This document shows positions 50,420 through 60,249 of a stretch of 64,000 nt of DNA, one piece after another. This DNA comes from Calcarisporiella thermophila CBS 279.70 (Eukaryota > Fungi > Calcarisporiellomycota), in contig NW_027192199.1 in NCBI RefSeq assembly GCF_041956535.1, positions 186,001 to 250,000 on the forward strand, in the 5' to 3' direction. The notes beneath the pieces are model-generated. The model worked only from the letters and a program-made list of their open reading frames with translations. It ran no database searches and had not been told where the DNA came from. How positions within the stretch are numbered: the stretch's first letter is position 1; each line of letters begins with the position of its first letter. The position numbers and the translations under genes are program-made.

Positions 50420-51598
50420 ATGCGTACTTTCATTCTTCTTACCTTGGCTTTTGTTGGATCTGTGCTGGCTGCTCCTGTCAACGATAATACCTCAGGGGGG
50501 GTGAGCCAACTCCCGAAAACGGTCGATCAACCCGCCGCCGTGAGCGGCTGCTCCAGCATTGCTGCTGATGGTCATGGAAAGCGCTCCTGCCGACGGACCT
50601 TGAGTAAAGCTGCTGAATTGCAAGAGGATAGTTCCGTTAAAGCCGCTCCGGAGCCGCCAGTGGGGGGCCCCACTGCTCCTGCCGGAGAATCCACAGGAAA
50701 GACTGTCAAGAAATCGGATGGACAGCCCGTTAATAAGAAAGCCACAACAAAAGCGGTGGATGACGCTGATTCTACCGCAGAGGCCGGAAAACCTTCAGAG
50801 GTAAAGCCTGACGTTCACGCAAAAGAAAAAGTTCCAGCAGCAACCCCAAAGGATCAAACGACCGAGGAAATAGCTAAAACCCCCCAGACTGGGAAGATTA
50901 CAAAAGGAACATCTCCGGAGGCAGTCACCGAAGGGAATGCCGTGATTCCTGGAACCGGAAATACTGCTGAAAGCAATATCGCCGCTCCGGGAGCGACTGG
51001 GGAACCGGAACAAAGTGAGGCCCCCCCAGCAGGCTTGGGTGGAGATTTGGAGCAGACTGAGGAACTGGAAAAGCGTGAAGAGCAGGAGGAGGATTCAACC
51101 GGTGAGCCAGTCACCCCTGTGACAAGTGGATCCGAGCAGACGGAGGGTGAGGCAGAGTTTCCGCACCTCCACCGGCGAACTCACTCGTCGAAGACTACGC
51201 AAGCAGGAGCACCAGCAGGCGCAGGAGCAGGAGCGGAGAAGGAGAAGGCAAAGGCCGACACTGAGAAGGCTGCTTCGGCTCCTAAAGATACTGCTACACT
51301 CCACCGACGAACTCACTCGTTGAACACTGCGGGAGCAGGAGCAGGAGCGGAGGAGAAGGCAAAGGCTGACGTTGAGAAGGCAAAGGCTGACACTGAGAAG
51401 GCTGCTTCGGTTCCTAAAAATACTGCTACGCTCCACCGGCGAACTCACTCGTCGAAGGCTACGGGAGCAGGAGCACCCGCAGGAGCAGGAGTAGGAGCCG
51501 GAGCGGAGAAGGAGAAGGCAAAGGCTGACACTGAGAAGGCTGCTTCGGTTCCTAAAGATGCTGCTACGCCCAATGAGCCTAAGTCGCAGGGGCAGTAA
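50420..51598 (+). CDS. Secreted Kex2-processed repeat precursor (three LHRR-THS units)
   Basis: Signal MRTFILLTLAFVGSVLA-AP; KRSCRR, EKR and 3x LHRR sites; intronless 392 aa. Confidence 0.85.
   Translation: MRTFILLTLAFVGSVLAAPVNDNTSGGVSQLPKTVDQPAAVSGCSSIAADGHGKRSCRRTLSKAAELQEDSSVKAAPEPPVGGPTAPAGESTGKTVKKSDGQPVNKKATTKAVDDADSTAEAGKPSEVKPDVHAKEKVPAATPKDQTTEEIAKTPQTGKITKGTSPEAVTEGNAVIPGTGNTAESNIAAPGATGEPEQSEAPPAGLGGDLEQTEELEKREEQEEDSTGEPVTPVTSGSEQTEGEAEFPHLHRRTHSSKTTQAGAPAGAGAGAEKEKAKADTEKAASAPKDTATLHRRTHSLNTAGAGAGAEEKAKADVEKAKADTEKAASVPKNTATLHRRTHSSKATGAGAPAGAGVGAGAEKEKAKADTEKAASVPKDAATPNEPKSQGQ
51167..51570 (+). repeat. Three coding tandem repeats (~120-140 nt) with high nucleotide identity
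   Basis: ctccaccgNcgaactcactcg...gagaaggcaaaggcYgacactgagaaggctgcttcgg recurs three times. Confidence 0.9.
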
Positions 51599-52202: not shown

Positions 52203-52685
52203 TTATCTGCGATGTATTCGTCTAAATAGCTTGAGTAACTTATACATTGACCCTGCTTGTTCACTATCTTTAGTGCAATCATCCATTGCGTAAGAAGGGG
52301 GATTTATATCGATCTGTACAGTTTGCTCATCCTCCTCGCTGTCATTCAAAACGGCGGGGGGTGGGGGACTAAGCCTATATAATTCCTCGAGCACTTGCTC
52401 TGAGATTATCCGCACCTGCGACTCTGATAAGCTTCCCGACGTTTCATTGACTTCGCCATAGGCTGGAAGTAATTCCTTATCGTGTTCGTTCTCGGATGCC
52501 TCTCTGTTGCTTTGAACCTCTTGCATTCGTGTCCGAACGCGTGCTGCTAATGAGTTGAGAATCTGGCGTTTTTTGACAAGTCGGAGGTGTAGATAGCAAG
52601 ATATTATCAAAACAATGAATCCCATGCCTGCCCCGATGGATACGGCCGTCACGAACTGGGTGGGAATGGCAGAGGAGCTGCTCAT
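52203..52685 (-). CDS. Single-pass membrane protein with PY motifs (candidate Rsp5/Nedd4 adaptor or cargo)
   Basis: N-terminal TM VSIGAGMGFIVLIISCYL, basic stop-transfer, LPAY and PPSY motifs; TATATA run upstream. Confidence 0.65.
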   Translation of the reverse strand: MSSSSAIPTQFVTAVSIGAGMGFIVLIISCYLHLRLVKKRQILNSLAARVRTRMQEVQSNREASENEHDKELLPAYGEVNETSGSLSESQVRIISEQVLEELYRLSPPPPAVLNDSEEDEQTVQIDINPPSYAMDDCTKDSEQAGSMYKLLKLFRRIHRR

Positions 52686-54127: not shown

Positions 54128-54137
54128 GATATAAAAA
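54128..54137 (+). promoter_or_regulatory. TATA box of the 54346 gene
   Basis: GATATAAAAA ~215 nt upstream of ATG; CT-rich leader with (TTC)n at ~54305-54331. Confidence 0.5.
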
Positions 54138-54345: not shown

Positions 54346-56928
54346 ATGAGGAATTTGGCCTTCATCATCGGCCTTATCGGCCTTGCCAATCTTCCCCTGC
54401 TTCAAAGTGCACCTCTCCGTGAAAAACGCGCCGCTGACATGTCTTTTGGATCCATCTCCTCACCAGCCCAGGCGGTCGACTCTGAGGAGGGGGCCTATGA
54501 TGAGACTAGGCTACCCAAAACTCGGGGAAGGCTTTGGAAACGTGGTTTAATCGACGGTACGCTCAACAATCCCCACATTATCGACCACGTCTCCGCACTC
54601 GACACCAACATCAACTCCGACCCTCAGACGAGCGAAAATAACAATGCGAATACCCGCGCTGATGGATGCCTCAACAACGCCATCGGCCAGCACCAAAAGC
54701 GCCATGGTATGTGCAGGCGTAAAGTCGAAGGTACGGTGAAAGCGCCTGAGCAAGAAAACGAAAAGCGTGGGCTACTGGATGGATCTGCAAACAATCCTCA
54801 TGTCATCGATCATATCTCTGCACTCAACTCCAACATCAACTCCGACCCTCAGACGAGCGAGAACAACAATGCAAACACGCGTTCCGACGGCTGCCTCAAC
54901 CATGCCATTGGCCAACACCAAAAACGCCATGGAATGTGTCGCCGCTCAACTCCCGAGGCCAACAAGGAGAAGGCCACGGAGGAGAAGCAGGAGAAGCGTG
55001 GGTTGTTGGATGGATCTGCGAACAATCCTCATGTCATCGATCATGTCTCTGCACTCAACTCCAACATCAACTCCGACCCTCAGACGAGTGAACAAAACAA
55101 TGCAAATACGCGTTCAGAGGGATGTCTCAATCACTCCACTGGACAACATCAAAAACGCCATGGAATGTGCCGCCGTGCAGCTACCGACAGCAACAGGGAG
55201 AAAGTCGTGGAGGAACAACAACAACAAGAGAAGCGTGGATTATTGGATGGGTCAGCGAACAACCTTCATGCCGTTGATCATGTCTCCGCACTCAACACTA
55301 ACATCAACTCGGATCCGCAAACCAGCGAAAACAACAATGCAAACACACGCGCAGATGGATGTCTCAACAACGCAATTGGTCAGCATCAGAAACGCCATGG
55401 AATGTGCCGCCGTTCTCACAACAACACCAACCCCAACACTAGCGCCAAGAAAGAAAGCACCAAGAAGGAGAGCGAGAAGGTCGTGGAAGAGAAGCAGGCG
55501 AAGCAGGAAAAGCAGGAAAAGCAGGAAAAGCAGGAAAAGCAGGAAAAGCAGGAAAAGCGCGGGCTCTTGGATGGTTCAGCCAACAATCTTCATGCCGTGG
55601 ACCATGTCTCTGCACTTAACACCAACATCAACTCCGATCCTCAGACGAGTGAAAACAACAACGCAAACACCCGAGCGGATGGATGCCTCAACAATGCCAT
55701 CGGCCAACACCAGAAGCGCCATGGGATGTGCCGACGAGCCACCACCGAGCAACCCAAGGTAGAGGCGGTGGAAGAGCACGAGAAGCGCGGGGTTTTGGAT
55801 GGGTCCGCCAACAATCTGCAGTTGATCGACCACGTCTCGGCTCTCAACACCAACATCAACTCGGATCCCCAGACGACGGAGAATACCAACTCAAATACCC
55901 GTGCGGACGGCTGCCTCAACAACGCGGTGGGTCAGCATCAAAAGCGCCATGGCATGTGCCGACGTGGACTTGTGGATGGCTCGGCCAACAACCTGCAGCT
56001 GGTGGACCATGTCAAGGCTCTCGACACCAACATCAACTCGGATCCTCAGGTCGCCGAGAACACCAACGCCAACACTCGTGCTGAAGGCAAGGGAAACAAT
56101 GCGATCGGTGAACACCAAAAGCGCGGGCTCCTCGATGGGACACTGAACAACTTGCAACTGATCGACCACATCACCGCTCTTGACACCAATATCAATTCCG
56201 ACCCGCAGGTCGCCGAGAACACCAACTCCAACACTCGCTCTGATGGATGCTTAAACAACGCGATTGGTGAACACCAGAAGCGGACATGTCGCCGTGGCCT
56301 GGTCGATGGCACATTGAACAACCTCCAACTCCTTGATCATATCGATATTTTGACGACCAACATTAACTCTGATCCCCAAGTTGCGGAGAACACCAACTCC
56401 AACACGCGTTCCGACGGCACCCTTAATCATGCTATCGGCGAGCACCAAAAGCGTGGTCTATTGGATGGTTCTGCGAACAATCCTCATGTCATTGACCATG
56501 TCTCTGCACTCGACACCAACATCAACTCCGATCCACAAACTGCAGAAAGCAACAATGCCAACACTCGATCATCAGGTAAACTGAATCACGCCACCGGACA
56601 ACATTCGCGACGTGGGCTTCTCGATGGGACTCTGGGACAACCTCACATCATCGATCATGTAGACTTACTCAACACGCTCATCAACTCGAATCCGCAGAAG
56701 ACCGAGAACAACAATGCCAACTCACGCGCAGACGGGAAACTTAACAATGCCGTAGGTCAACACCAGCGCCGTGGGCTTCTTGATGGGACACTAGACAATC
56801 CGCACATCATCGATCATATCGGCCTTCTTAACACCAATATTAATTCCGATCCGCAGACGTCAGAAAACAATAACGCAAATACGCGCGCAGATGGCAAGCT
56901 CAACAATGCAATTGGACAGCATCAGTAA
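54346..56928 (+). CDS. Secreted Kex2-processed repeat precursor (KEP) with twelve 51-aa Asn-rich cores
   Basis: Signal MRNLAFIIGLIGLANLPLLQS-AP; each core (GLLDGSANN...NNAIGQHQ) is bounded by KR/RR or the stop codon; intronless 860 aa. Confidence 0.93.
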   Translation: MRNLAFIIGLIGLANLPLLQSAPLREKRAADMSFGSISSPAQAVDSEEGAYDETRLPKTRGRLWKRGLIDGTLNNPHIIDHVSALDTNINSDPQTSENNNANTRADGCLNNAIGQHQKRHGMCRRKVEGTVKAPEQENEKRGLLDGSANNPHVIDHISALNSNINSDPQTSENNNANTRSDGCLNHAIGQHQKRHGMCRRSTPEANKEKATEEKQEKRGLLDGSANNPHVIDHVSALNSNINSDPQTSEQNNANTRSEGCLNHSTGQHQKRHGMCRRAATDSNREKVVEEQQQQEKRGLLDGSANNLHAVDHVSALNTNINSDPQTSENNNANTRADGCLNNAIGQHQKRHGMCRRSHNNTNPNTSAKKESTKKESEKVVEEKQAKQEKQEKQEKQEKQEKQEKRGLLDGSANNLHAVDHVSALNTNINSDPQTSENNNANTRADGCLNNAIGQHQKRHGMCRRATTEQPKVEAVEEHEKRGVLDGSANNLQLIDHVSALNTNINSDPQTTENTNSNTRADGCLNNAVGQHQKRHGMCRRGLVDGSANNLQLVDHVKALDTNINSDPQVAENTNANTRAEGKGNNAIGEHQKRGLLDGTLNNLQLIDHITALDTNINSDPQVAENTNSNTRSDGCLNNAIGEHQKRTCRRGLVDGTLNNLQLLDHIDILTTNINSDPQVAENTNSNTRSDGTLNHAIGEHQKRGLLDGSANNPHVIDHVSALDTNINSDPQTAESNNANTRSSGKLNHATGQHSRRGLLDGTLGQPHIIDHVDLLNTLINSNPQKTENNNANSRADGKLNNAVGQHQRRGLLDGTLDNPHIIDHIGLLNTNINSDPQTSENNNANTRADGKLNNAIGQHQ
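55501..55557 (+). repeat. 9-nt coding minisatellite (aagcaggaa)x6 encoding KQE repeats in a spacer
   Basis: Read directly from the sequence. Confidence 0.92.
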
Positions 56929-57919
56929 TCACCGACTTCATCTGGTTATCCAGTATTTTTTTTCCTACTTATCTAATGTATTCTCTTTTCTCTTTTTCTT
57001 CTCATTTTTTTCCCTCCTATTTTCCCTCTCTTTCCCTCTCTTTTTTTCCCCCCTTTCTCATATTAAGTTCTCATGAAACATCCTATCATTGACATTTTCA
57101 AAATATGATATAATTTCTTATTAATGATTCTGCTGTATCATGATTTTCTTTTATTTTCAATTTTCTCATAACATAGATGCTTTTTTTTTGAATCTTTTAT
57201 TCTTGGGCATTTTTCGATTAGGCACAATCTTATTAGCTTGTTGTCTGAATAAAATCAGTTTCTTTGTTAGTGAACACTGCTTAGCACTCGAATTTCCTTA
57301 TTTTTTTTTCCGGTTTGAAAACTTGCCGACGGAATGGAGCAATATCTTGATTTGTAAGAGAAGGGCTATGGTCGCAATGGACTTCTGCAGACGGCATTCG
57401 CTGGATATCTTCTCTGCATTCAGGGCATTTGGAAGTTCTGTGGGCGTCCCTATTTAATTTAATATATGTTCTAAGAGGCTCATTAATTATCTCATTTTTA
57501 ATTTTTCTCTTAATGAGGAAAGGAAGGATTGGTTAATTTGGCAATGTAGAAAGGAGCAAACATGGCCGCCCTCGATCTCTGTGGTACACTCGCGAACAAG
57601 TCAATGGAGAGGCAGAGACCAGCATTGTTGTGTGCGCAGCAGATTTTTTTAAATAAAACCGAAACACTAGTGAAAAATCGAAGGACACAGACAATCCTGT
57701 TGTCTACTGCGAGTCATCTTGTCCATCTTTTCTCCCGTCCCTCTTCAATATCCCCCTATATCTCCACCGTTAATATCAGTCCTGCCTCTCATTGGGAGAA
57801 TGGTGTCTGTTTAAATCGCTTTTTTCTTTACCAATTTTTAGTAGACGGACTCTTCAATTTCGCGGCAACCCATAAACCAGCGTTTTTTTTAGACTAAGAA
57901 TAATTTGGCCCCATCCAAA

Positions 57920-60249
57920 ATGCCGTGTCTAGGATCTCGTAAAAAGAACAAAAAGGCCCTGAACATCACATCCCCAGATCTTATACGCACGCCGTCTGGA
58001 GCTTTGCGGCCAGGTTCGCAATCCTCTGTCGTACTGCCAAGTCAGCTCCGCTCACAGCGCACAAGTACTTCGCCGTCGCTTCCCCATTCTCCTCGTGATA
58101 GCGGCCAGCTGACCACCCCACCCACTAGCCTCAGCTCGGCTGGATTCCCATCTGGGTCATCTGTCTCATCGGAATCGCTGCCGGGCATCCCCGTGGCAGC
58201 TAAGACAACGAGCAGAAACCTGTCGGGATTCTCATTGAGAGGAGGGAAAATCCCAGCAAAGCAATTGAGGGCGGAATTCGATGAATTAAAAATTCAGGTA
58301 ATTGAATTTAATGAGAAGATGCTCGTGGGTTGGTCATTCAATTCGCTGAGTTATTATTGGTATAGAGCGAGGAGACCCTAAGGAAGCTTGCAGAGAACCA
58401 AGAGCTCCTTCGAACCCGCGAGGCTGAACTGGAGGCCCTCCGCAGGCGTCTCGAGCAAGAACAACAATCCCATAATTTACGTACTGAGGAGCTGAAGGCG
58501 TCCTCAGAAGAAGAGTCGCGTAAGCTCATTGCAGAACGTGACGCTCTCCTACGACAGCAAGAGGAGCAGATAACCGCTCTGCGCCAGAAGTTGGAGCAAG
58601 AGCAAGAGAAAAAAGCGGAGGAGGAACGCATCGCTCTGGATGAATTGGATAAGTTGAGGATAAAGAATGAAGAGACGCTCAGGCGCTTGGCTGAGAAGGA
58701 GGAGATGCTGCGGGTGCACGAGCAGGAGTTGGAGAAACTTCGCCTGGAGTTGGATGAGGAGCGAAGAGTGGCCATGGAGACGGTGGGTGAGGTTGAGGGG
58801 TTGAAAGAGGAGAAGGTGGAAGCACTCAGGAAGCTTGCTGAGAAAGAAGCCTTGTTAAGCACGCACGAGGAGAAACTCGATGAATTACGCCTGAAACTCG
58901 AGCAAGAGCGTGCGGAGGCTGTGGTCATGCCGGCACTGGAGGAGGTGAACCAGCAGCTTGCTGAACTGCACGAGCGTCATGAGGATTTGACGCAGCGTCT
59001 GGCCCAAAAGGAACAAGAGCTGGAGAATGTTCAGAAGATGCTGGCCTCGCAAGCCCAGCCTACGTTGGAGGTGGATGAGGCAAAGAAGAAGCAATTCCGT
59101 CGCCTAACGGTGGAGCTGGAGGCCGAGCGGGAGATGATGGCTCGGCTTGAGGAGCTGACGCAGGAGCTGGAGGCCCAAAAGCAGGCGCACGAGACCGCCC
59201 TTGCTCTCCACGAGCAGGTGGTGGCCGAGAAGGACTCCCTGCTCAGGGAACACCAGCAAGCTCTCGAGGAGATGCAGCAGTCCCACCAAAAGGCTCTCGA
59301 CTCTCTAGCGGAGAAACATCGTTTCGCTCTCGAGGAATTGCGGCGACGGCATCATGCCGAGATTCAGGAGTTAAATGAGCGCATCGAGAGATCCAAGCAC
59401 GAGAAGTTGGATCACGAGTTTGAAAAGATGCTGGCGGAATTCGAACAGACTCGCCACAACAACGAGGTCCAGATCGAGTCGCTCCGGGCTGACCAACAAG
59501 CCGAGCTCGACACGCTGCAGCAATCCCAGCAGACACAACTCGACTCCTTGCGCAAGACCCAAAATCGCGCCACGGCCCAGTGGCGCCGGCAATCCGCATT
59601 GTTCATCAAGCCTACGGAGGCGGTTTCGTGGCCTGCCCCGCAGCCCCTAAGCGTCCTGCGAAAGACTACATTGCGGCACGTGGAGCCTCCTAAGGAGCGC
59701 AAGATCACTGACGACGGATACAACCTCGACCCGGAAAGCCATCTTGTCCAGGTGTACATATCTTCGGTGAGCGGGAGCCTGACAATCAAACGGCAGCAGG
59801 AGGAGATCAGGCAGATGCTTGCAGCCCTTTCCATCCCATTCGAGGAAATTGACATTGCGGCGAGCGAGCGGGCTCGCAAGGTCATGCGCGAGCGAAGCGG
59901 ACTGAGAGAAGTCCCGCAGGTATTCGTTGGAGGAGAGTATCGCGGCTCCCATACCGATATCAAACAGGCGCAGGATTTGACAGTCTTTTTGCAGGCGCGT
60001 GCTCAGCGCAGGGAAAACGAGATGGGTCGGGGGGAGGCCAATGGATGCTCAGCACCGGCCCCCACTCTGCAGCAAAATGGGGAGCGCTCGCCTGTGTATC
60101 CTTTGAAGCATGGCCACGGGCGCGAGAATACCCCCTGCTCGCAAGAGGCTCACAACGACGCCACTGACGACGACCAAATGTTTCGGATGTTAGAGAAAGA
60201 GCTGCAAGAAGGAAAAGTGGATGCCGCGCTGGTCCTGGCAGATCTGTAA
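57920..60249 (+). CDS. Long coiled-coil protein with C-terminal SH3BGR/glutaredoxin-like domain, 2 exons
   Basis: Intron 58298-58365 keeps frame; heptad E/K/L-rich rod; VQVYISSVSGSLTIKRQQEEI...FEEIDIA...VPQVFVGGEYRG. Confidence 0.85.

What the first reader, a model, noticed from the sequence alone, without database searches (positions are those of the whole stretch)
54544..56925. Perfect Cys co-variation across the Kex2 site implies a disulfide-tethered mini-peptide
Seen: cores 1-6 and 8 have Cys at position 42 (GCLN), and every one is followed by KR plus a tiny Cys peptide (HGMC six times, TC once) plus RR. Cores 7 and 9-12 have K or T at that position, and none is followed by a Cys peptide (7/7 versus 0/5). 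Inference: the two Cys form a disulfide loop spanning the KR site. After processing, a 2-4 aa piece would stay covalently attached (insulin-like two-chain logic), or the loop would shield the site. One gene would thus give capped and uncapped peptides, for example a redox-removable brake on polymerisation or a cross-link/metal (His-Met-Cys) handle.
Basis: partly seen in the sequence, partly recalled or inferred. Interest (0 to 1): 0.85.

Follow-up and report, generated by a model that had tools for sequence, protein, structure and literature searches.

The report
Fungal polyprotein with disulfide-tethered mini-peptide caps
A fungal gene strings together twelve copies of a 51-residue secreted peptide that some soil bacteria make singly, and seven copies carry a cysteine paired with a second cysteine on a tiny piece just beyond a protease site, so that piece probably stays attached by a disulfide after cutting; what the peptide and its cap do is unknown.

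Summary
ORF 54346-56928 (860 aa; genome is Calcarisporiella thermophila) has a signal peptide and twelve 51-aa cores between KR/RR sites. All 14 Cys form seven core-Cys42 / KR-mini-peptide-Cys-RR pairs. The pairing recurs in paralogues: 8 of 10 Cys cores have a partner, and 0 of 54 Cys-free cores have a lone one. It also arose independently in a Streptomyces-type homologue with a Gly6 linker and no KR. It is strong but not perfect. A disulfide is likely (~85%); cleavage of the inner KR to a two-chain product is only moderately likely (~60% given the bond). The His-Met-Cys metal handle is not supported, since only the terminal Cys is conserved. The redox brake is untested. The core matches no Pfam family, is up to 91% identical to single-copy Streptomyces peptides, and also occurs in cyanobacterial-type loci and a few fungi and plants. 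I favour a Rep1/chaplin-like self-assembling surface peptide, but no structural or expression evidence was obtained. The scan had already noted, on other DNA of this genome, the bacterial kinship (s1-593856, s1-600670) and the Cys co-variation (s1-605971).

The parts
54346..56928 (+). Single open reading frame, 860 aa, secreted Kex2-type repeat precursor with 12 cores
54130..54135 (+). TATAAA box candidate, followed by a pyrimidine-rich leader
   Evidence: consensus match only
54346..54408 (+). Signal-peptide-like N-terminus (about residues 1-21); no later transmembrane segment
   Evidence: hydropathy; cleavage point judged by eye, no SignalP run
54409..54543 (+). Pro-region with two KR sites
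54544..54720 (+). Core 1 (Cys42 codon 54667-54669) + KR + HGMC (54703-54714) + RR
54769..54945 (+). Core 2 (Cys42) + KR + HGMC (54928-54939) + RR
55000..55176 (+). Core 3 (Cys42) + KR + HGMC (55159-55170) + RR
55237..55413 (+). Core 4 (Cys42) + KR + HGMC (55396-55407) + RR
55414..55554 (+). Longest charged spacer (47 aa, with a 9-bp tandem repeat). Other spacers: 54721-54762, 54946-54993, 55177-55230, 55738-55782
55561..55737 (+). Core 5 (Cys42; same protein sequence as core 4) + KR + HGMC (55720-55731) + RR
55789..55965 (+). Core 6 (Cys42) + KR + HGMC (55948-55959) + RR, directly followed by core 7
55966..56124 (+). Core 7 (Lys42) + KR, no mini-peptide
56125..56295 (+). Core 8 (Cys42 codon 56248-56250) + KR + TC (56284-56289) + RR
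56296..56454 (+). Core 9 (Thr42) + KR
56455..56613 (+). Core 10 (Lys42) + RR
56614..56772 (+). Core 11 (Lys42) + RR
56773..56925 (+). Core 12 (Lys42), ending at the stop codon exactly as the Streptomyces single-core peptides do
50549..50596 (+). Same C-x9-KR-SC-RR module in the neighbouring secreted ORF 50420-51598, which has no core

Best explanation
The gene is a Kex2-processed polyprotein of a bacterial-type 51-aa acidic, Asn-rich secreted peptide. In seven repeats, Cys42 of the core forms a local disulfide in the ER with the Cys that ends the next 2-4-residue segment (inferred, about 0.85). In the late Golgi, Kex2-type proteases cut after KR and RR and Kex1 trims the basic residues (established pathway, not shown here). 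The inner KR is then probably cut at least in part (inferred, about 0.6 given the bond). The gene would release five plain cores and seven cores carrying HGMC or TC on a disulfide at position 42, an exposed variable position between invariant Gly41 and Asn44. The constant chemical feature is a C-terminal Cys bonded to Cys42; the other residues of the mini-peptide do not matter. Most likely use (weak inference, about 0.4): the cores self-assemble into a Rep1/chaplin-like surface layer or fibre, and the cap is one of several interchangeable C-terminal decorations of the family, which masks or modifies position 42.
For: All 14 Cys are in such pairs. In paralogues, 8 of 10 Cys42/43 cores have a downstream partner and 0 of 54 Cys-free cores have a lone one; the within-gene permutation product is 3e-7, not corrected for shared ancestry. 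P0101 gained Cys42 and Cys58 together, in frame, while close relatives have neither. Cys-to-Cys distance varies from 12 to 24 residues with unrelated linkers, which fits a flexible tether rather than a fixed hairpin staple. The inner site is KR in 13 of 14 fungal loops (KK in one) despite free linkers and synonymous divergence. Its upstream context (HQKR) is the same as at the core 7/8 and 9/10 junctions, which have no other site. The genome has six kexin P-domain hits. Window cores have 1 N-glycosylation sequon against 15 +/- 3 in shuffles, a stronger depletion than in bacterial cores (122 vs 178), compatible with passage through the ER. Precedents for convertase-cut, disulfide-held chains: K28 (PMC5391188) and the DT loop (PMC9018708).
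Against: There are no protein or RNA data (no run listed). Loops without any dibasic site exist (P0101; last core of L033), so cleavage is not needed for the pair to be selected. L021 cores 1 and 2 each have a lone Cys43, and L033 has five Cys. The tree-based independent-pairs test had only 3 well-supported pairs (p 0.25). AlphaFold gave only low-confidence models (pLDDT 55 and 50) with a helix at residues 9-23 and no beta structure, so assembly is not supported structurally. KR may simply be the inherited repeat boundary.
Confidence: 0.5

Rival explanations
1. Same disulfide, but the inner KR is shielded and not cut. The product is a single chain, core-KR-HGMC, closed by a C-terminal disulfide ring that stiffens or protects the C-terminus, like the intramolecular disulfide of chaplins; useful in a thermophile.
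For: P0101 (Gly6 linker) and the last L033 core make the ring with no dibasic site. One L022 loop has KK. Other paralogues carry short Cys-x3-4-Cys tail loops with no site inside. The TC ring is only 14 residues. Chaplin Cys pair and its importance: PMC5618241.
Against: KR is kept in 13 of 14 fungal loops while everything else in the linker drifts; ring length is unconstrained; convertases do cut inside disulfide loops of similar size (and own knowledge of DT).
Confidence: 0.3
2. The mini-peptide is a built-in protecting group. It occupies Cys42 during ER transit so that seven like thiols do not cross-link the precursor or cause its retention. After secretion and assembly, thiol-disulfide exchange swaps it for core-core cross-links, or removes a brake on assembly.
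For: Only the Cys of the mini-peptide is conserved. Two L021 cores with lone Cys43 could pair with each other, showing that core-core links may be tolerated. Cys-bridged oligomers are needed for BslA hydrophobicity (PMC5618241).
Against: It needs free thiols or a reductant outside the cell, and this precursor has none. Assembly of the cores is not shown. P0101 cannot shed its partner.
Confidence: 0.12
3. No functional disulfide. Cys42 and the mini-peptide are 45 bp apart and travel together in repeat duplication and conversion; the co-variation is hitch-hiking.
For: The repeats are tandem duplicates; only 3 starred independent pairs; two exceptions in L021.
Against: Different linkers in five paralogous genes, two core positions (42 and 43), an independent bacterial gain, Cys-to-Lys changes needing three base changes, and no lone mini-peptide Cys in 54 Cys-free paralogue cores.
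Confidence: 0.05
4. On core function, not exclusive with the above: the core is a bacteriocin-like or signalling peptide and not a structural one, with the cap tuning its activity or stability.
For: One cyanobacterial-type homologue has a double-Gly leader next to a C39-peptidase ABC exporter. The gene is rare (6 of 351 Streptomyces genomes) and sits in mobile contexts: plasmids, next to phage tail genes, inside a DUF2397/2398/2399-SbcC cluster. Residues 10-24 have helical amphipathic periodicity.
Against: Cores are acidic (net -2 to -6). No conserved immunity or modifying gene was seen beside the Streptomyces copies (by inspection of ORFs). The core tolerates very different C-terminal passengers (His, Asp, Lys, Tyr-Gly tails; ~100-aa bacterial domains), which fits a scaffold better.
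Confidence: 0.3

Closest known systems
KEX2-processed repeat proteins (KEPs; PMC6339444, PMC7329392, PMC9769878)
   Same: Signal peptide, repeated cores between KR/RR sites, charged spacers.
   Different: The core has no known family and has bacterial single-copy counterparts. A keyword check of PMC9769878 gave no 'cysteine' or 'disulfide' hits and PMC7329392 no 'cysteine' hits; the Cys passages seen in PMC6339444 concern pairs inside alpha-pheromone cores. I found no described KEP with a disulfide across a dibasic site, in a limited search.
Ustilago maydis Rep1 repellents (PMC3133707)
   Same: Signal plus 12 repeats, Kex2 products of 34-53 aa, uncyclised peptides.
   Different: No sequence link was found (Rep1 itself was not compared directly); amyloid and surface activity are shown for Rep1 only; cores here are acidic and very Asn-rich; no disulfide cap is described for Rep1.
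Streptomyces chaplins (PF03777) and rodlins
   Same: Short Sec-exported actinobacterial peptides of similar size; nearest named clusters by language-model features (0.79 and 0.81, leads only); chaplins carry an intramolecular disulfide. The same fungal genome has three true chaplin-domain hits elsewhere.
   Different: No Pfam chaplin match for any core. The family is present in about 2% of sampled Streptomyces, whereas chaplins are widespread (own knowledge). Cys is optional and almost absent in bacteria.
Two-chain convertase products: insulin, yeast K28 killer toxin (PMC5391188), diphtheria toxin loop (PMC9018708)
   Same: Disulfide made first, dibasic site cut later, chains stay linked.
   Different: Here the second chain is only 2-6 residues, optional, mixed with uncapped copies in one precursor, and cleavage is not demonstrated. 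No toxin homology.

Membership tests
KEP (KEX2-processed repeat protein) | N-terminal secretion signal | tested here: met
   Hydrophobic stretch at residues 3-14 and no later TM segment; hydropathy only, no SignalP
KEP (KEX2-processed repeat protein) | Repeated cores flanked by dibasic sites | tested here: met
   12 cores of 51 aa between KR/RR
KEP (KEX2-processed repeat protein) | Kexin present in the organism | tested here: met
   Six PF01483 P-domain hits over the cut-off, one with stops inside
KEP (KEX2-processed repeat protein) | Actual processing into peptides | not testable with these tools
   No peptidomics; no RNA run listed
Two-chain disulfide-linked convertase product (insulin/K28 logic) | Cys pair flanking a dibasic site and co-varying | tested here: met
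   7/7 vs 0/5 here; 8/10 vs 0/54 in paralogues
Two-chain disulfide-linked convertase product (insulin/K28 logic) | Disulfide formed and inner site cleaved in vivo | not testable with these tools
   Needs non-reducing MS; loops without a site exist (P0101, L033)
Chaplin (PF03777) | Match to the chaplin profile | tested here: not met
   No match for 47 + 33 family members; the genome's chaplin hits are at other loci
Rodlin (PF25848) | Match to the rodlin profile | not testable with these tools
   Model absent from the Pfam copy; only a 0.81 feature score
Rep1-like repellent / functional amyloid | Cross-beta assembly and surface activity | tested here: inconclusive
   AlphaFold low confidence with no strands; alternating hydropathy at positions 18-48; no fold match
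Hydrophobin | Eight-Cys pattern / PF01185 | tested here: not met
   At most one Cys per core; no Pfam match
Dikaritin-type fungal RiPP | Adjacent DUF3328/UstYa modifying genes | not tested
   Only three neighbouring ORFs were scanned, none UstYa-like; the whole window was not searched
Double-glycine bacteriocin-like peptide | GG leader with C39 ABC exporter | tested here: inconclusive
   Met for homologue P0019; P0021 and P0025 have the leader but no adjacent exporter; does not apply to the fungal gene

The most novel reading that the evidence does not exclude
An undescribed cross-kingdom secreted peptide, exported by Sec in actinobacteria, by a double-Gly route in cyanobacteria and as a Kex2 polyprotein in this fungus, self-assembles into a surface polymer. 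The fungus has evolved a genetically encoded 2-6-residue disulfide cap, cut from the same chain, that works as a removable protecting group controlling cross-linking or assembly, with capped and uncapped subunits mixed in a ratio fixed by the gene.
Probability: 0.12. Interest if true: 0.85.

Novelty: new variant of a known kind. Interest (0 to 1): 0.58.

Why it matters
It would be a very small instance of insulin-like two-chain processing, and I found none described for a fungal repeat precursor: a way to encode a side-chain decoration or thiol-protecting group in the gene itself. It also gives a directly testable handle, with exact masses, on an unnamed peptide family that is up to 91% identical between Streptomyces and an early-diverging fungus and has expanded to about 90 cores in about 20 genes. 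The natural capped, uncapped, uncleavable (P0101) and lone-Cys (L021) versions form a ready control series.

Tried and rejected
Pfam hits on the whole precursor (TetR_C_21, DUF2095, LAMB4) are treated as artefacts of summing weak scores over repeats: single cores match nothing. PDB sequence searches were empty. The atlas gave no usable hit for the fungal fragment. Both AlphaFold jobs were low confidence and Foldseek found nothing, so disulfide geometry could not be modelled. Genome-wide DNA pattern scans for KR-x-C-RR and C-x9-KR-x-C-RR were at control level (121 vs 181; 51 vs 42). None of the 30 loci checked from the first scan showed the full motif in a secreted-looking ORF, so there is no evidence for a genome-wide module beyond this family and the neighbour gene. 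A His-Met-Cys metal site was rejected because the mini-peptides share only Cys. 'Cores replace missing hydrophobins' was rejected because the genome has three hydrophobin hits. Contamination was rejected: 19-20 loci on eleven contigs, KR-split architecture, GC3 0.61 against 0.86-0.94 in Streptomyces. Recent transfer is not supported: codon identity at shared residues is only about 30-60%, similar to that between repeats. Direction of transfer cannot be read from a 45-column tree. No phage record carries the peptide. Withheld N stretches in L023, L025, L034 and L035 were left out of all counts.

Full report
Observation. The region lies in one ORF, window 54346-56928 (+), 860 aa. Split at KR/RR it gives a hydrophobic N-terminus, a pro-segment, twelve cores of exactly 51 aa, seven mini-peptides and five charged spacers. 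Cores 1-6 and 8 have Cys42 and are followed by KR-HGMC-RR (six) or KR-TC-RR (one). Cores 7, 9, 10, 11 and 12 have Lys or Thr and no mini-peptide. These are all 14 Cys of the protein. Naive Fisher p is 0.0013. Because the repeats are duplicates, I built a DNA tree without codons 42-43. Cys-free cores fall with different Cys cores (7 and 9 with 6 and 8; 10 with 2 and 3; 11 and 12 with 1), which suggests about four joint changes, though no branch is starred. Cores 10 and 11 are the only loop-less cores followed by RR, as expected if KR plus the mini-peptide was deleted (inference).

Source and family. Homologues named Calcarisporiella thermophila lie on contigs with the same lengths as contigs of the window's assembly, so this is that early-diverging fungus. 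A core profile finds 93 matches in about 20 genes on eleven contigs. The paralogues are signal-peptide precursors with the same core and very different C-terminal tails: poly-His, Asp/His-rich, Lys-rich, Tyr-Gly motifs and short self-contained Cys pairs. The genome has six kexin P-domain hits, three hydrophobin hits and three chaplin-domain hits at unrelated loci. Multi-core precursors were found only in this genome, apart from one partial two-core bacterial-type protein.

Does the co-variation hold in homologues? Among 64 paralogue cores, 10 have Cys at 42 or 43. Eight have a downstream partner: seven as KR or KK + mini-peptide ending in Cys + RR (HKFC, NGGGPC, WNKGPC, HGGPC, HNC, NNNC, WC), and one inside the tail with no dibasic site. 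None of the 54 Cys-free cores has a lone downstream Cys (one L027 core miscounted was corrected by hand). The chance of this placement within genes multiplies to 3e-7. That figure ignores shared ancestry, and the strict tree test has too few supported pairs to reach significance (3 pairs, p 0.25). Exceptions exist: L021 cores 1 and 2 each have a lone Cys43 (they could pair with each other), and L033 has five Cys. In all 14 fungal loops the second Cys sits directly before RR, never KR, so after trimming it is the C-terminal residue. Cys-to-Cys distance is 12-24 residues. The strongest independent evidence is P0101, a Sec-type bacterial homologue in a Streptomyces-like locus. It gained Cys42 and a penultimate Cys58 joined by a Gly6 linker, in frame, while its close relatives have Gln42 and stop seven or eight residues earlier. 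It is the only one of about 120 non-own cores with Cys at this position. The neighbouring secreted ORF 50420-51598 carries C-x9-KR-SC-RR with no core (pairwise E 0.022), either a remnant of a shared ancestor or a reused module.

What the core is. It matches no Pfam, NCBIfam or PDB entry. An exhaustive profile search and a follow-up found well over a hundred single-core 'hypothetical proteins'. Most are 74-77-aa Streptomyces and other actinobacterial proteins whose signal peptide ends exactly before the Gly that starts the fungal core and whose stop falls exactly where core 12 ends. Window cores 1, 4, 5 and 12 are 89-91% identical over 45 columns to P0095/P0156, against at most 67% to their own paralogues. 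Cyanobacterial-type copies have double-Gly leaders, one beside a C39-peptidase ABC exporter. Single copies occur in Orbilia oligospora (after KR, with an intron in the core), Dactylella, Crucibulum, Stipagrostis and Papaver. Three export routes thus yield essentially the same N-terminus, which independently supports cleavage at the KR before each core. In Streptomyces the gene is rare (6 of 351 genomes), shows no conserved neighbourhood and sits in mobile contexts. Horizontal transfer is likely; synonymous sites are largely diverged and the direction is unresolved. Conserved positions are G1, D4, G5, N8, L19, S25, N34, N36, T37, G41 and N44. Position 42 is among the most variable (Lys 41%), as expected for an exposed turn. 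Hydropathy is helix-like in residues 10-24 and alternating in 18-48. AlphaFold gave only a moderately confident helix at 9-23. Nearest named clusters by language-model features are rodlin and chaplin, below the reliable range.

Mechanism. Shown: the architecture, the pairing, its recurrence and exceptions, and the bacterial kinship. From established knowledge: disulfides form in the ER before Kex2 and Kex1 act in the late Golgi (PMC9769878; K28, PMC5391188), and convertases can cut inside a disulfide loop leaving the parts tethered (PMC9018708). Inferred: Cys42 bonds to the mini-peptide Cys (about 0.85). The inner KR is cut at least partly (about 0.6 given the bond), because it has the same upstream context as junctions that have no other site and is kept in 13 of 14 loops while the linker drifts. 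Loops with no site (P0101, last L033 core) show that the bond, not the cut, is the primary selected trait. Sequon depletion in the window cores (1 versus 15 +/- 3 shuffled; bacterial 122 versus 178) fits a product that passes the ER and must stay unglycosylated, though part of the depletion is built into the conserved motif. For function I lean to a self-assembling surface peptide like Rep1 (12 repeats, 34-53-aa products, amyloid; PMC3133707) or chaplins (intramolecular disulfide; PMC5618241). The reasons are that the core accepts many passengers and that the same genome holds chaplin domains. A bacteriocin-like or signalling role remains open. The His-Met-Cys metal handle is rejected; the redox-brake or protecting-group idea is possible but untested.

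Comparison and novelty. By architecture it is a KEP, and the defining sequence features are met. It is not a chaplin or hydrophobin by profile; rodlin could not be tested. The two-chain logic is known from insulin and K28. An optional 2-6-residue second chain mixed with uncapped copies in one precursor was not found in the papers searched, a limited search. I class it as a new variant of a known kind. The scan's notes show the bacterial kinship was reported before from two paralogous loci, and the Cys co-variation from the L022 paralogue. I read these after obtaining my own results, and they are not independent support. The chaplin check came from one such note. Limits: no expression or protein data, withheld stretches in four paralogue loci left out, and no usable structure.

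Noticed in passing
window 50420-51598 (+): Secreted-looking 392-aa Ala/Lys/Glu-rich ORF with 132-bp repeats split by RR and a C-x9-KR-SC-RR module near its N-terminus; no Pfam match and no paralogue of its first 100 aa in the genome.
   Followed up: partly
window 58591-60249 (+): Coiled-coil protein ending in an SH3BGR/glutaredoxin-like domain; probably an exon of a larger gene starting near 57905.
   Followed up: no
window 52203-52685 (-): 160-aa ORF with one N-terminal hydrophobic segment and a PPSY motif; weak TMEM51 match below the cut-off.
   Followed up: no
G000:C10:350299-350454, C30:220558-220698, C1:916489-916608: Three chaplin-domain (PF03777) hits over the cut-off in this fungal genome.
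   Followed up: partly
G000:C25:89122-89352, C18:374809-375051, C18:373349-373579: Three hydrophobin (PF01185) hits, uncommon outside Dikarya.
   Followed up: no
G000:C5:1110032-1112179, C7:757755-759762, C17:258385, C19:558104: Six kexin P-domain hits, four of them in two convergent pairs: a possibly expanded Kex2 family that might treat KR and RR sites differently.
   Followed up: no
L034:260-2939 and L037:2313-4127: Paralogues whose cores are truncated and fused to long His/Asp-rich tails, suggesting metal binding; L037 ends with a Cys pair across KR (C-x6-KR-TSDC-stop).
   Followed up: partly
L093:5001-5477 (P0094) and relatives P0017, P0041, P0108, P0154, P0160: Bacterial fusions of the core to an unnamed ~100-aa domain with two Cys; P0094 lies inside a DUF2397/2398/2399/3323-SbcC gene cluster.
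   Followed up: partly
L099:3076-3240: The Crucibulum locus encodes a complete single core in one frame; the annotated 132-aa protein appears mis-spliced.
   Followed up: partly
L068:1139-1513 (G000:C3): 125-aa secreted-looking ORF that keeps only the C-terminal half of the core motif.
   Followed up: partly
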